This document shows positions 44,101 to 50,100 of a stretch of 64,000 nt of DNA, one piece after another. Made by a program: the position numbers and the translations under genes. Numbering within the stretch: position 1 is the stretch's first letter; each line of letters starts with the position of its first letter. The notes below the pieces were generated by a model that was not told the DNA's origin, did no database searches, and worked only from the letters and a program-made list of their open reading frames with translations. The stretch is from positions 134,129,170 to 134,193,169 of the forward strand of contig NC_068982.1 in NCBI RefSeq assembly GCF_001194135.2, read 5' to 3'. Origin of the DNA: Octopus bimaculoides (lineage: Eukaryota).

Positions 44101-47100
44101 ACTCTCAGAGTGGTTGGCGTTAGGAAGGGCATCCAGCTGTAGAAACTCTGCAAAATCAGATTGGAGCCTGGTGCAGCCATCTGGTTCTCCAGTCCTCAGT
44201 CAAATCGTCCAACCTATGCCAGCATGGAAAGTGGATTTTAAACGATGATGATGATGATGATATATATATATATACATATATATACACACATATATTCCAT
44301 GTCAGCATGGAAAACGGATGTTAAATGAGGATAGTTAAAATATATGTATATATACATCATCATCATCATCATTATTTAACAATTGTTGTTCATGATGGAG
44401 TGGGCTGGAAGGCTGCACCAGTCTGATTTGGCATGGTTTCTATAACTGGATACCCTTCATAACACCAACCACTCCAAATATATATATATATATATATATA
44501 AGTATAAGGAAAATAAGACAAGCTAGAAAATGTTAAAATAATTTTATTATGAAGAACATTTTAGTACCAGTTTCAGTCTTTGCGACTTTTCCAACTTCGA
44601 GTAAAGCATGAAAAACAATTAAATTGTGGAAAAATGAAATGAAATGTTTTTAAAAATATTTCCATAGCTTTCAAATAAAAGGGACATTTTTCTTTTTCAG
44701 TCTGTCTCTCTTTTTTACTTGAGGGTTCTAGGTAGTTAGCAACAGCTAGTTTAATATGAATTCTTGAAGAAGAAGAAGAAGAAGAGGAGGAAGACTCTTT
44801 AGCCTTATCGAAGACATAAGAGCCAGAACAGTCTTAGTGCCATGCAAAGATGTCCTCACTATACTAAAATGATTGGTGTTTGGAAGGGCATCCAGCCAAA
44901 ATCTCAAGCCACAGATTAAACTTACTAGTGAGATGTGTCCCTTAACTCTTATTATTATTAAGAAAATGGATTTAATGGATATAAAATGAATTTATTAATT
45001 AATTAACCTTGCCTACATTTTTGTTTCAATTTATTACACTCATTACAAATTAATAAATTAATTTGATATCAATTAAATGTCTCCTTTTTCTTAATAATAA
45101 TAATAATAATAATTGATATTTATAATATATTTATTGAAGAGATATCTCTTAGCAATATAGTATATCAAACCAGTGTTTCTTGGATCCAACTATCCCTATA
45201 AGAGGTTTTTATATCCTCATATTAACCATATATATATATATATATATATATTTCTGAGGAACATTGAAACTCAAAACATGTATATAAAGCTATAAATAAT
45301 AGTGTATAAATTTAGGGACAAGGTCAGCAATTTTGAGGGATTACATTCCTGGTATTTTTAGGTCAGTTACTAGTTGTTATAGTGAAGTATCTAATGGTGT
45401 TGTTGTCACGGTGATACGGTAGTGCCTCATTATAATACCACACAACTCTGTCAAACTTAGCTTCCTTAGAAGACAATGAGGTATTCTCTTGCTAATTACA
45501 TAATATACATGTTTGAATAGATAGTTTCATTTTATTTATGTCAATTAAGAACTGGTTTCTCTTTAGTGTCCTAAAGGTCTCATATGATTTTGGGGCAGAA
45601 TGTCAATAGGACCATGAAGACAAAAGTCTTGGGAGATGCTCCAACTATTATATATGTAATATAATAGCCAAGGTAATTATAGGATAAATCAAGCAAAGAT
45701 TTTGAGATAAATCAAATTGATTTAATACTAAGTTATCGATAATTATAGATACCTTAGTATTAAATCTTATGATTAGATTATAATTCAATCATAAACAACC
45801 AGTCCACACATATATTTAAATAATAAGTTACTTACATTTGACACTAGAAACTCTGTGACTGTCCAATCTGATGTTATAGTTTCATTCAACTTCTCTACTT
45901 TTATATTTCCATAACATCTTGTTTCATCGTTATCTGGCCAATAATGATCACACTTTTCCTGTAAAAAACAAAAAGAATAGAAATTATATATATATTTTTT
46001 TCTTATATAAATTCACATCCAGATAAAGTTAGTAATGCCAAAAAATCAGTAATAAGGAATAGCAATTAGTTCAGGGCATCAAATTCAAAGTGTTACAGGA
46101 AATACACTATAGGAAATACAAATTCTTGAAAAATATCACCATCACCACCAAAATATTGTAGTAAACTTGTAATCAATAATTAGTGAGGCACTGAGCTGGC
46201 AGAATTGGGAAAAAATGCTCAGCAGCACTTTGTCTGTCTTCAAGGTCTGAAGTCCTTAATAATGCTCATCTACCTAAAGGCACTTCATTGCTTGAATGGC
46301 TCTCTATCTCTAACTACAGAATGTAGCACCCTACATAAAATTATGAGCAATTGCTGCAAAGGAGACAAAGAGAGAAGTAACTACAAATGCATTAAAATGG
46401 TAAGAAAAGTTTGAAAGTTACCATAAATGTTACTGTGCAATTGATGAAGAAGAGAATTACACTAGATAAGATGCAATCCAGCTTTATGCTCGACAAGATA
46501 TCATTGATGCTCTTTTCTTAGTGAAACAGCAACAGACTGCATGAGAAATACTAAGCCAGAATAAAGCCACTTTTCTAAAATTTTGTTGATCACGACAATG
46601 CCAGTTTAGTTGGGAAACATTAAAAAAATGAATGCTACTAAAGATAACTGGAACACTTACACGATGTTTCTCAATACAGTTAGCCAACATCACAATGTTG
46701 TGGACATTTTGTTCCCATACCATACGCCAAAAATCATCTCGTGTAGAACTTAGTGGTCCTTGTGTTGCAATGTATTCACGGCGAGAAATGAATCCCTAAA
46801 TTAGTGTCATTAGAAAAAACAAAAGTACTTAGAAAATTCAAATAAAAATCCACTAACAATATTGAAACATGAACAAATTATAAACAATTTGTGGTGTTTG
46901 CGTACGAGTAGATGTAATTGCCTTACCTCGGTTTTCCTTTCCTCGACTGCGAGTCTGTCTTGCGGTATCCAATCCTTGAAGCTCGCCCCGACCCAAAGTA
47001 CACCAGGAATAGCAGCTGCTTCTCCCAAACCTAGACCGTCGCTTAACACATCTTGTCCTGACCACAACCCCGTTCGAAAAAGGGCACANNNNNNNNNNNN

Positions 47101-50100
47101 NNNNNNNNNNNNNNNNNNNNNNNNNNNNNNNNNNNNNNNNNNNNNNNNNNNNNNNNNNNNNNNNNNNNNNNNNNNNNNNNNNNNNNNNNNNNNNNNNNNN
47201 NNNNNNNNNNNNNNNNNNNNNNNNNNNNNNNNNNNNNNNNNNNNNNNNNNNNNNNNNNNNNNNNNNNNNNNNNNNNNNNNNNNNNNNNNNNNNNNNNNNN
47301 NNNNNNNNNNNNNNNNNNNNNNNNNNNNNNNNNNNNNNNNNNNNNNNNNNNNNNNNNNNNNNNNNNNNNNNNNNNNNNNNNNNNNNNNNNNNNNNNNNNN
47401 NNNNNNNNNNNNNNNNNNNNNNNNNNNNNNNNNNNNNNNNNNNNNNNNNNNNNNNNNNNNNNNNNNNNNNNNNNNNNNNNNNNNNNNNNNNNNNNNNNNN
47501 NNNNNNNNNNNNNNNNNNNNNNNNNNNNNNNNNNNNNNNNNNNNNNNNNNNNNNNNNNNNNNNNNNNNNNNNNNNNNNNNNNNNNNNNNNNNNNNNNNNN
47601 NNNNNNNNNNNNNNNNNNNNNNNNNNNNNNNNNNNNNNNNNNNNNNNNNNNNNNNNNNNNNNNNNNNNNNNNNNNNNNNNNNNNNNNNNNNNNNNNNNNN
47701 NNNNNNNNNNNNNNNNNNNNNNNNNNNNNNNNNNNNNNNNNNNNNNNNNNNNNNNNNNNNNNNNNNNNNNNNNNNNNNNNNNNNNNNNNNNNNNNNNNNN
47801 NNNNNNNNNNNNNNNNNNNNNNNNNNNNNNNNNNNNNNNNNNNNNNNNNNNNNNNNNNNNNNNNNNNNNNNNNNNNNNNNNNNNNNNNNNNNNNNNNNNN
47901 NNNNNNNNNNNNNNNNNNNNNNNNNNNNNNNNNNNNNNNNNNNNNNNNNNNNNNNNNNNNNNNNNNNNNNNNNNNNNNNNNNNNNNNNNNNNNNNNNNNN
48001 NNNNNNNNNNNNNNNNNNNNNNNNNNNNNNNNNNNNNNNNNNNNNNNNNNNNNNNNNNNNNNNNNNNNNNNNNNNNNNTTTGTGGTGTTTGCGTACGAGT
48101 AGATGTAATTGCCTTACCTCGGTTTTCCTTTCCTCGACTGCGAGTCTGTCTTGCGGTATCCAATCCTTGAAGCTCGCCCCGACCCAAAGTACACCAGGAA
48201 TAGCAGCTGCTTCTCCCAAACCTAGACCGTCGCTTAACACATCTTGTCCTGACCACAACCCCGTTCGAAAAAGGGCACAAATCCCAATCAAGGCTCCCTC
48301 TGCCCTTTTTCCTCTTCCGGTCAGCCTCCCCAGACACTGACGTCATACCACACAATTATAAAAAACATTCTGGAAAATAATATTTGCCTTGAAGAAATAT
48401 TTAAGCAATATATTTCTGATTCTTTTATTCATGAAAAACCAGCAGCTACCAATAAAATTTGAACTCAGAATTGTGATAGTAAACTGGATACAGAAGCCAA
48501 TGGGTCTGATGTCCTATTGCATAACTCCACTACTTCACAAAACATTCCCCAAAACTGTGATGGTTTACATACTCATGCCTCTTCTGACTAGGCTAATTTC
48601 TGAGAAGGGTAGATTTGATAAACTTCATTCACAATACTGTTCAGCATTAATTATCTCAAGAGATTTTGAATTCAAAATCAACTGTAAGGAATAATATAAA
48701 CGCAATCCCAAATTTACTCAAATACCCTACTCACTCAATCTCTATGGGGAATATCAATAGTAATGTAATAGAATGAATTCAAAAACATCTTTATTATAAA
48801 TGAATCACTGATGGCAGCTCAAAGGTGGATGTTATCTATCTTGACTTTACTAAAGCCTTCAATTCTGTGCCACACAAATGACTCGTGGCAAGACTCTCAA
48901 CAATGGGTGAGAAAGATGATCTCCCTAACAGGTTGAAGTCCTTCATTCTCATTCAAAAAGAGGTAGTCATGATTTTAAGACATCCTTCTTCATCCTATGA
49001 GATGACATCTGGTGTATCACAAGGACCCATTCTTGGACACCTGTTGTTTGTTGCATATATTAATGACATAGATGCCAACTTGAAGAATGTTATAGTGTTG
49101 AAATATGTAGATGACATCAAGTTGCACTTTGAGATAGAAAGAACAGATCCTATATGCTATAGATCCTTCCTGCAATCAACCCTGGCCACAATGCAACAAT
49201 GGATTACTGACTGGTAACACAAGCTGGCTATGGACAAGTGCACCACTGGGAATTTTGGGAGGAAAAACCCAGCTTTCACATACTTCCTCAACAACACCAA
49301 TCTTAAGAAGTCTATTAGTGAACATGACATGGGTATTATTGTCAAAAGCAATCTGCACTGGACAAATGACATTCTAGGATTGTCAAGAAGGTTGAAGGCA
49401 TCCTAGCATCACTCAGCAAAAGATCTTTGTCAGCTGCTCTCCGGCTATCTATTTAAAGCTGTATATGACTATGGTACGTCCACAGTTAGAATTTGCATCA
49501 TCAATTTGGAACCCCTAACTTGCTTGGCATATCAATATCCTGGAAACTGTTCAGAAATTGCAACCTAACAAATACTCGCCCTCAAGCATCTACCATACAC
49601 TGAACGTCTTGCTTCCTTGGGTATGGACACATTAAAGCTCTGACATCTGGTAACTGACTTGATAGACACCTACAAGATTGTCCATCATCTTTCCAACAGC
49701 AACCTCAGGCAACTTTTTGAATTCCATACATCTAACACTCAAGGACAAGCTTACAAAATCAAAAACACAATACAGCACCCACTTTTTCATGCTCAGAATA
49801 GTTGAAGCATGGAATAAACTAAGTTGTTAGCTGTCGAGACACTACATCCTTCAAAAATTCCATATTTCCAGAAATTTGCCAACAGTACACCTGATACCCC
49901 ACTCCACCTATTTTTTTTAAGACTTATTCACTGTTCACTTCCTGTGCATATTCTATGTTCTGGTCATGCAGTTTTGGTTACTTTTTTTGATGAGTTGTAG
50001 TGCACATGAACACTGTATACAATAAGTTCATTATATATATAGTTTAAAGAAAACTAGGTACAAATTCACACTTACTGGAATATAATTAGCATTTATGTAA

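What the first reader, a model, noticed from the sequence alone, without database searches (positions are those of the whole stretch)
46927..48345. Promoter-like CpG island with an in-phase splice donor inside the catalytic-domain intron
Seen: in a CpG-depleted window, about 270 bp keep about 14 CpGs and carry TGACGTCA (CRE), CCGGAAG (ETS) and CCAAT. They end in GAG|GTAAGG only 131 nt upstream of the acceptor of exon 46795. On the minus strand a stop-free 219-nt frame ([10 protein letters not shown]...[11 protein letters not shown], 73 codons; 48336-48118 in the right copy) runs from a weak CAG to that donor in phase 0, the phase of the host intron. Inference, three options: (a) an internal promoter making a short cytosolic RNA whose first in-frame AUG is MVWEQ, giving a PTP fragment without the KNRF pTyr loop (likely inactive, possibly a decoy); (b) a cassette exon inserting 73 aa between DYINA and TQGP; (c) the first exon of a separate nested gene or ncRNA further downstream.
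Basis: partly seen in the sequence, partly recalled or inferred. Interest (0 to 1): 0.7.

Follow-up and report, generated by a model that had tools for sequence, protein, structure and literature searches.

The report
LTR-like mobile element in phosphatase intron
The CpG-rich, promoter-looking 272-bp block inside this tyrosine-phosphatase intron has the end structure of a retrotransposon long terminal repeat, and its apparent second copy may only be an unmerged contig overlap, so it is most likely an ordinary mobile-element insertion, not a host promoter or exon.

Summary
The sequence features are real, but the setting was misread. The last 201 bases before the gap (46888-47088) are identical to the first 201 after it (48079-48279). 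The 'two copies' are therefore either one copy with an unmerged contig overlap, or two identical repeats about 0.9 kb apart. The sequence alone cannot decide.

The block is 272 bp, with GC 0.52, 14 CpG and o/e 0.83. The rest of the intron has o/e 0.12. Its edges are sharp and read CAATT|TGTGGT...ACCACA|CAATT: TG...CA termini, a 6-bp inverted terminal repeat and a 5-bp target-site duplication. That is the signature of an LTR. An independent GC change-point places the edges within 1 nt of that signature.

The perfect CRE and the ETS site each occur once in the whole window, both in the block, as expected for an LTR U3 promoter. The donor GAG|GTAAGG, 131 nt upstream of the exon, and the 73-codon open frame also exist. 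However, three of six frames are open, and the frame has no homologue among 5.8 billion proteins or 1.84 billion representatives. Rfam, tRNA and folding tests are negative.

Five of the window's eight CpG-rich patches are repeat copies. Copy number, transcription and splicing could not be tested. Interest is low.

The parts
46885..46889 (.). Left copy of the 5-bp direct repeat CAATT (putative target-site duplication)
   Evidence: CAATT immediately precedes TGTGGT.
46890..47088 (-). Left-contig part of the block (199 bp). In gene orientation this is its 3' part and includes the donor GAG|GTAAGG (exon end 46927, GT at 46926-46925). It is contiguous with the host exon.
   Evidence: 199/199 identical to 48081-48279.
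47089..48078 (.). Assembly gap (990 N, length estimated). It is either spurious, or it hides the last 73 bp of one repeat plus about 0.9 kb of internal sequence.
48081..48352 (-). Complete 272-bp block: TGTGGT...ACCACA on the + strand, GC 0.522, 14 CpG, o/e 0.83. LTR-like, with the putative U3 (promoter part) at the high-coordinate end.
   Evidence: An independent GC change-point places the edges at 46891 and 48353.
48353..48357 (.). Right copy of the 5-bp direct repeat CAATT
48338..48345 (.). Perfect palindromic CRE, TGACGTCA (position 8 of the block in minus orientation)
   Evidence: the only occurrence in the window.
48314..48320 (-). ETS core CCGGAAG (position 33 in minus orientation)
   Evidence: the only occurrence in the window.
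48267..48311 (.). 11-bp perfect inverted repeat, GAAAAAGGGCA / TGCCCTTTTTC, with a 23-nt loop that holds one CCAAT/ATTGG
   Evidence: I1.
48118..48336 (-). Judged non-coding.
46661..46795 (-). Host phosphatase exon [14 protein letters not shown]...CIEKHR (45 codons), acceptor phase 0
   Evidence: Y_phosphatase, E 2.4e-79, for the joined exons.
50076..50246 (-). Upstream host exon ...[11 protein letters not shown]...DYINANYIP, with donor CCA|GTAAGT after 50076. The 5' limit is approximate.

Best explanation
The block is a long terminal repeat (LTR) of a retrotransposon, inserted in the sense orientation into the phosphatase intron.

Either it is a solo LTR and the 990-N gap is an unmerged 201-bp contig overlap (real intron about 2.09 kb). 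Or it is the two identical LTRs of a small non-autonomous LTR element whose roughly 0.9-kb internal part is unread. I rate these two readings about equally likely.

Shown:
- a sharply bounded 272-bp GC/CpG-rich block;
- TG...CA termini with a 6-bp terminal inverted repeat;
- a perfect 5-bp direct repeat on both sides;
- promoter-type motifs (CRE, ETS, inverted CCAAT) clustered in the first 70 nt in gene orientation.

Inferred:
- an integrase made a 5-bp staggered cut, producing the CAATT duplication;
- the motif cluster is the U3 promoter of the element;
- the CpGs persist because the insertion is young and/or because TEs in this kind of genome are poorly methylated;
- the donor GAG|GTAAGG and the open frames are by-products of composition.

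Any transcription from the block into the downstream phosphatase exon would be LTR read-out, not an evolved host promoter.
For: - Edges: GC jumps from about 0.2 to 0.5 at both edges. A likelihood change-point that ignores the signature puts the edges at 46891 and 48353, within 1 nt of TGTGGT (46890) and ACCACA (48352).
- Signature: '5-bp direct repeat + TG..CA + 6-bp inverted termini' occurs 8 times in the window over 150-1000 bp (1.5 in shuffles). Only this one coincides with a compositional block: GC 0.52 inside against 0.28 outside, 14 CpG against 0-4. At that density, a hit within +-3 nt of both pre-defined edges has a chance of about 1e-5.
- A 9-mer, AATTATAAA, also brackets the block; only 0.5% of comparable site pairs share one.
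- Assembly behaviour: overlapping contig ends elsewhere got 10 N (40-bp overlap at 54367), whereas here 990 N were estimated. The right contig starts 2 nt outside the block edge, where an assembler stalls on a repeat.
- Base rate: 5 of the 8 CpG-rich patches in the window are multi-copy repeats, and the same intron holds an RT fragment and another repeat. Octopus TEs are reported to be CpG-dense with low methylation (PMC9476566).
- No coding or RNA-family signal.
- Small LTR elements with 4-5 bp duplications are known in molluscs (PMC10886601; PMC6934838).
Against: - No second, independent copy was found: none in the window, and no collection with this or a related genome could be searched at DNA level. 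'Repeat family' is therefore inferred, not shown.
- There is no TATA box or AATAAA/ATTAAA signal on either strand.
- PBS and PPT cannot be examined: they are absent from a solo LTR and hidden by the gap otherwise.
- The terminal inverted repeat is only 6 bp, and a longer one is not significant.
- I noticed the signature after looking at the edges, so the probability is post hoc.
- The pre-insertion site is itself a local repeat (AATTATAAAC AATTATAAAA), which makes short flanking repeats somewhat easier to obtain.
Confidence: 0.65

Rival explanations
1. A genuine host CpG-island promoter or alternative first exon, not TE-derived. It would drive either a 5'-truncated phosphatase RNA (first AUG at MVWEQ, lacking the KNRF loop) or a nested gene or lncRNA. 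The flanking repeat and TG..CA ends would be coincidence.
For: The block meets the classic CpG-island criteria: 272 bp, GC 0.52, o/e 0.83. The CRE and ETS sites are unique in the window and unlikely by chance. A strong donor lies about 230 nt downstream of the motifs and 131 nt before a phase-0 acceptor. The block is single-copy within the window.
Against: The insertion signature coincides with the compositional edges. The contig break sits at the block edge. Most CpG-rich patches here are TEs. The product would lack part of the catalytic fold. No transcript or conservation evidence was obtainable.
Confidence: 0.12
2. A mobile or retroposed element of another class. Candidates are a SINE-like retroposon flanked by the 9-bp duplication AATTATAAA, or a cut-and-paste MITE (for example the Ginger or Transib type, with short duplications).
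For: The 9-mer AATTATAAA lies on both sides (46876-46884 and 48354-48362; P about 0.005). The edges are sharp. The assembler behaved as it does at a repeat.
Against: No tRNA, 5S or 7SL-like head (ARAGORN; Rfam). No A-rich or microsatellite tail. No significant long terminal inverted repeat. With the 9-bp reading, the ends lose the TG..CA symmetry.
Confidence: 0.13
3. An in-frame cassette exon (48336-48118) that inserts 73 residues between ...NYIP and GFISRREY...
For: A stop-free frame in phase 0, a CAG at its start, and a good donor at its end.
Against: No homologue in 5.8e9 or 1.84e9 proteins: the single hit is a repeat-driven artefact. No Pfam match. Three of six frames are equally open, with P 0.096. 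The acceptor is weak. The insertion would split the conserved catalytic domain.
Confidence: 0.02
4. An independent small non-coding RNA gene. I considered RNase P/MRP-like RNA because ACAGACTC...GAGGTAAGG recalled the CR-V region.
For: Only a resemblance recalled from memory, plus a TTATAA just upstream and an 11-bp hairpin.
Against: Rfam shows nothing at gathering score or at E<=10 on either copy. The MFE is no better than shuffles: z -0.26 on the minus strand, -1.3 on the plus strand. There is no T-run terminator at the block end.
Confidence: 0.03

Closest known systems
Solo LTRs of LTR retrotransposons (Gypsy, BEL/Pao, Copia)
   Same: 5'-TG...CA-3' ends, short inverted termini (TGTGGT/ACCACA), a perfect 5-bp target-site duplication, a size of a few hundred bp, promoter-type transcription-factor sites concentrated at one end, and an intronic location.
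   Different: No other family member or autonomous partner has been seen. There is no TATA box or canonical poly(A) signal. The superfamily cannot be assigned.
TRIMs and other small non-autonomous LTR retrotransposons of animals, including bivalves (PMC6934838; PMC10886601)
   Same: If the gap is real, there are two identical direct repeats of 272 bp about 0.9 kb apart, flanked by a 5-bp duplication. Animal and mollusc TRIMs make 4-5 bp duplications.
   Different: The internal part (PBS, PPT) is unread. The total length of about 1.46 kb exceeds the usual TRIM limit of under 1 kb. There is no tRNA- or 5S-like segment like those in the Helenus or Ajax LTRs.
LTR-derived alternative promoters and intronic promoters of receptor tyrosine phosphatases (e.g. 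truncated PTPRO, cytosolic PTP-epsilon; from my own knowledge)
   Same: What it could work like: a sense-oriented promoter inside the gene, followed by a donor that can splice to the next exon.
   Different: Known internal RPTP promoters lie upstream of an intact catalytic domain. Here the transcript would start after the KNRF and DYINA motifs and encode a crippled domain. No expression evidence exists.
Vertebrate-type CpG-island promoters
   Same: GC >= 0.5, o/e >= 0.6 and length >= 200 bp are met, together with CRE, ETS and CCAAT motifs.
   Different: It is very short and bounded by a target-site duplication. In this genome, CpG-rich patches are mostly TEs.

Membership tests
LTR of an LTR retrotransposon (solo or paired) | Termini 5'-TG...CA-3' with short inverted terminal repeats | tested here: met
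   TGTGGT at 46890-46895 and ACCACA at 48347-48352, 6/6 complementary.
LTR of an LTR retrotransposon (solo or paired) | Target-site duplication of 4-6 bp directly abutting both ends | tested here: met
   CAATT at 46885-46889 and 48353-48357. The edges coincide with a GC change-point to within 1 nt.
LTR of an LTR retrotransposon (solo or paired) | Belongs to a repeated family: other copies, some of them pairs flanking gag-pol or PBS/PPT | not testable with these tools
   There is no other copy in the window. No mollusc genome could be searched at DNA level, and the same species is absent from the protein collection. The only indirect hint is the contig break 2 nt from the block edge.
LTR of an LTR retrotransposon (solo or paired) | U3-R-U5 organisation with a promoter and a polyadenylation signal | tested here: inconclusive
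   CRE, ETS and inverted CCAAT lie at positions 8, 33 and 65 in minus orientation. There is no TATA, AATAAA or ATTAAA on either strand.
TRIM / small non-autonomous LTR element | Two direct LTRs enclosing a short internal domain with PBS and PPT | tested here: inconclusive
   199/199 identical letters on both sides of an estimated 990-N gap. This could equally be one copy with overlapping contig ends. The internal part is unread.
CpG-island promoter | Length >= 200 bp, GC >= 0.5, CpG o/e >= 0.6 | tested here: met
   272 bp, GC 0.522, o/e 0.83.
CpG-island promoter | Transcription start site, open chromatin and absence of methylation | not testable with these tools
   No expression, chromatin or methylation data were reachable.
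Protein-coding (cassette) exon | The reading frame is conserved or has homologues, and is more open than chance | tested here: not met
   No true homologue. No Pfam match in three frames. P(>=73 open codons) = 0.096, and three of six frames are open.
Known structured RNA family (Rfam), including RNase P/MRP, snRNA, hammerhead | A covariance-model match | tested here: not met
   No match on the block at gathering score or at E<=10. Folding z-scores are -0.26 and -1.3.
SINE (tRNA-, 5S- or 7SL-derived) | A small-RNA-derived head with an internal Pol III promoter, and a 3' tail | tested here: not met
   ARAGORN finds none and Rfam none. There is no A-rich or simple-repeat tail.
MITE / cut-and-paste DNA transposon | Terminal inverted repeats of about 10 bp or more | tested here: not met
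   The best terminal alignment is no better than shuffles (P 0.28). Only 6 bp are inverted.
Host gene: classical receptor-type protein tyrosine phosphatase (R3-like, PTP10D/PTPRB/PTPRO) | A Y_phosphatase domain with the KNRF, DYINA, WPD and HCSAGxGRTG motifs, plus an FN3-like ectodomain and a TM segment | tested here: met
   Pfam PF00102, E 2.4e-79. The best relatives are named PTP10D, PTPRB or PTPRO at 55-61% identity. The relative's FN3/TM exon carries PF18861 PTP_tm. The exons are listed.

The most novel reading that the evidence does not exclude
The sense-oriented LTR (or a promoter exapted from it) is active. It would use its own donor at 46927 to splice into the exon at 46795, producing an N-terminally truncated, catalytically crippled cytosolic phosphatase fragment or a regulatory RNA. 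That would be an LTR-born internal promoter inside a catalytic domain of an R3-type receptor phosphatase in a mollusc.
Probability: 0.07. Interest if true: 0.45.

Novelty: new member of a known kind. Interest (0 to 1): 0.15.

Why it matters
Mostly as a caution. In this CpG-poor, TE-rich genome a short CpG-rich, motif-rich patch is more likely a mobile element than a host promoter, and sequence duplicated across an assembly gap must not be read as two loci. For annotation, the intron is either about 2.1 kb (solo LTR) or about 3.3 kb (small LTR element). The donor 131 nt upstream of a coding exon is a potential source of aberrant or chimeric transcripts of the phosphatase gene. If the insertion is young it may be polymorphic and useful as a marker. 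Only if LTR-driven transcripts were demonstrated would it become a modest example of TE-derived gene regulation in a mollusc.

Tried and rejected
1. RNase P/MRP-like RNA, a lead from memory (ACAGACTC...GAGGTAAGG resembling CR-V). Rfam is negative at gathering score and at E<=10 on both copies, and the fold is no better than shuffles. Rejected.
2. tRNA-derived SINE or TRIMp3. ARAGORN finds none, and TTCGAA is only a partial B-box. Rejected.
3. Coding exon or TE protein. The word-index search found 0 hits. The exhaustive HMMER search gave one hit, to a repetitive Cys-rich protein through a short unit repeated 7 times. Pfam found nothing in three frames. Rejected.
4. Long terminal inverted repeats (MITE). 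Not significant.
5. Tandem repeat. TRF finds none.
6. Finding other copies or orthologues. Nothing came from blastn within the window, two metagenome scans, one viral scan and one prokaryote-genome scan with exact and end-anchored patterns, or exact look-up of ten window ORFs. These collections essentially lack mollusc genomes, so the negatives say little.
7. A near relative does exist in Logan (SRR11869391, contig L001, 83.5% nt identity through exon and intron). With hindsight, the phosphatase search hid short near-identical exon ORFs below its top 120.
8. The accession SRR11869391 is not mentioned in the paper library.

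
Full report
**The gap first.** The window has four runs of N. At the one inside the finding (47089-48078, 990 N), the last 201 letters of the left contig (46888-47088) are identical to the first 201 letters of the right contig (48079-48279).

There are two possible resolutions:
- (i) The contigs overlap, the gap is spurious and there is one copy. The host intron (50075-46796) is then about 2,090 nt, not 3,280.
- (ii) Two identical units really lie about 1 kb apart, and the gap hides the rest of the first unit plus about 0.9 kb.

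The sequence alone cannot decide. Two points count against a trivial overlap. Another gap of this window with overlapping ends (54367-54376, a 40-bp overlap) was written as 10 N, whereas this one received an estimate of 990. And the right contig starts just 2 nt outside the block's edge. I rate the two readings about equally likely.

What does not depend on the gap:
- the complete block (48081-48352) and the 219-nt frame (48336-48118) lie wholly in the right contig;
- the donor at 46927 and the acceptor at 46795 lie wholly in the left contig.

What does depend on it is whether the CRE/ETS end seen at 48314-48345 is the one sitting upstream of the exon-proximal donor.

**Host gene.** On the minus strand the window carries a receptor-type tyrosine phosphatase:
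- an FN3-like exon (57355-56864);
- a transmembrane exon (53801-53547);
- catalytic-domain exons, including ...[11 protein letters not shown]...DYINANYIP (ending at 50076, donor CCA|GTAAGT) and [14 protein letters not shown]...CIEKHR (46795-46661, acceptor TTTAG|GG), both phase 0.

The joined exons hit Pfam Y_phosphatase at E 2.4e-79. The nearest database proteins are named PTP10D, PTPRB or PTPRO, at 55-61% identity.

**The observation.** The block is 272 bp with GC 0.522, 14 CpG and o/e 0.83. The other 1,817 nt of the intron have GC 0.357, 7 CpG and o/e 0.12, and the window overall has o/e 0.25. No 272-nt window off the block reaches 14 CpG.
- TGACGTCA (48338-48345) and CCGGAAG (48314-48320, minus strand) each occur exactly once in the 62.8 kb, both inside the block. 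In shuffles of the block they appear with P 0.003 and 0.03, and never together in 5,000 trials. This is a post-hoc choice from a large motif vocabulary, so it is suggestive, not decisive.
- The donor GAG|GTAAGG exists. AGGTAAG occurs only five times on the minus strand of the window.
- The open frame exists but means little. Two of three minus frames and one plus frame are open for at least 85 codons, and 9.6% of shuffles give at least 73 open codons.

**What the block is.** Its composition changes abruptly at both ends. Read base by base, the edges are CAATT|TGTGGT ... ACCACA|CAATT. The block starts TG and ends CA, its first and last six bases are perfect inverted complements, and the same 5-mer abuts both ends. 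This is the textbook signature of an LTR with its target-site duplication.

I saw this only after inspecting the edges, so I checked it in two ways:
- Counting the same signature across the window gives 8 instances at lengths of 150-1000 bp (1.5 in block shuffles). It is not rare in itself, but only this instance encloses a compositional block: GC 0.52 inside against 0.28 outside, 14 CpG against 0-4.
- A likelihood change-point on GC alone, blind to the signature, puts the edges at 46891 and 48353, within 1 nt of it.

At the observed density of signatures, a hit within +-3 nt of two pre-defined edges has a chance of order 1e-5. A 9-mer, AATTATAAA, also brackets the block (P about 0.005). It overlaps the 5-mer, and the pre-insertion site was itself a small local repeat.

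**Supporting context.**
- Five of the eight CpG-rich patches of this window are copies of interspersed repeats present 2-18 times in the window. They keep o/e 0.6-0.7 although their copies are only 75-89% identical.
- The same intron holds a reverse-transcriptase fragment (48903-49217, RVT_1) and another repeat.
- The octopus methylome paper reports high CpG density and consistently low methylation across all TE classes, with methylation concentrated in gene bodies (PMC9476566). I did not verify that this window is from a cephalopod.
- A contig end 2 nt from the block's edge is what an assembler produces where a repeat begins (inference).
- Small non-autonomous LTR elements (TRIMs) with 4-5 bp duplications are documented in animals, including bivalves (PMC10886601; PMC6934838). 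This makes reading (ii) plausible, though at about 1.46 kb it would be larger than typical TRIMs.

**What it is not.**
- Not a known RNA. Rfam gives nothing at gathering score for the whole window, and nothing on the block at E<=10 for either copy. There are no tRNA-like genes. Folding energies equal those of shuffles. My remembered resemblance to the RNase P CR-V region found no support.
- Not coding. The 75-residue frame has no hit among 5.8 billion clustered proteins at E<=1. In an exhaustive HMMER scan of 1.84 billion representatives it has only a repeat-driven artefact. None of the three long frames matches Pfam.
- Not a tandem repeat, and not a MITE with long inverted ends.

**How it most likely works.**
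- An LTR retrotransposon integrated here in the same orientation as the gene. Its integrase made a 5-bp staggered cut, which duplicated CAATT.
- Either LTR-LTR recombination later left a solo LTR, or a small non-autonomous element is still present.
- The CRE, ETS and inverted CCAAT at positions 8, 33 and 65 of the block (gene orientation) would be its U3 promoter. The absence of TATA and AATAAA weakens but does not exclude this.
- The CpGs persist because the insertion is young and/or because TEs escape methylation. Youth is suggested by the perfect duplication and, if there are two copies, by 199/199 identity.
- The donor and the open frames are by-products of GC-rich, TA-poor sequence.
- Transcription from the LTR into exon 46795 is possible. 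It would give an RNA whose first in-frame AUG (MVWEQ) lies after the KNRF and DYINA motifs, so the domain would be crippled. Nothing here shows that this happens.

**Limits.**
- Copy number, orthologous sites and expression are the decisive data, and I could not reach them.
- The public DNA collections on hand lack mollusc genomes (0 hits).
- The window's own species is not in the protein collection.
- A relative at 83.5% nucleotide identity exists in Logan (SRR11869391, L001), but only its FN3 exon contig could be fetched.

**Verdict.** The finding is a real sequence feature: a CpG-rich, motif-rich block with a good donor next to an exon. The best explanation is an ordinary LTR-type mobile-element insertion, complicated by an assembly gap (confidence 0.65 for LTR-type, about 0.8 for a mobile element of some kind). 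Novelty: a new member of a known kind. Interest: low (0.15).

Noticed in passing
window 48903-49217 (+): A 104-codon ATG ORF with a reverse-transcriptase fragment (Pfam RVT_1, E 6.7e-7; ...YVDDIKL...) lies in the same intron, about 550 bp from the block. It is a decayed non-LTR-type retroelement piece.
   Followed up: partly
window 54367-54376: This 10-N gap has contig ends sharing an exact 40-bp suffix/prefix overlap, so it is another unmerged overlap. It shows that this assembly writes overlapping ends as 10 N.
   Followed up: partly
window 17750-17759: This 10-N gap lies inside a locally repeated stretch. The last 158 nt before it match the first 158 nt after it at 97%, with several other offset matches.
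   Followed up: no
window 4861-5262, 17364-17661, 20178-20471, 38263-38528, 43921-44258, 61322-61881: An interspersed repeat family of about 280 bp, with copies 75-89% identical on both strands. It is CpG-rich (o/e 0.6-0.7) and accounts for most CpG-rich patches of the window.
   Followed up: partly
window 53840-54130 (+): A 96-codon ORF with a PHD finger (Pfam PF00628, E 4e-7) lies inside a single-copy CpG-rich patch (53912-54161, o/e 0.95), just upstream of the phosphatase's transmembrane exon on the opposite strand. It is probably TE-derived, but this was not tested.
   Followed up: no
window 7281-7640: A single-copy CpG-rich patch (13 CpG, o/e 1.0, GC 0.39) with a (GTGC/GTGT) run and a G-rich stretch. 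It has no repeat copy in the window and is unexplained.
   Followed up: no
L001 27-1008 vs window 57735-56787: A Logan genomic contig from run SRR11869391 (the same contig occurs in 5 samples) aligns at 83.5% nucleotide identity through the FN3 exon and flanking intron. A fairly close relative has therefore been shotgun-sequenced and could supply the empty-site test.
   Followed up: partly
window 49783-50034: A stretch of the same intron, just downstream of the DYINANYIP exon's donor, is about 75% identical to 29487-29734. This is another dispersed repeat, so most of this intron is repeat-derived.
   Followed up: no
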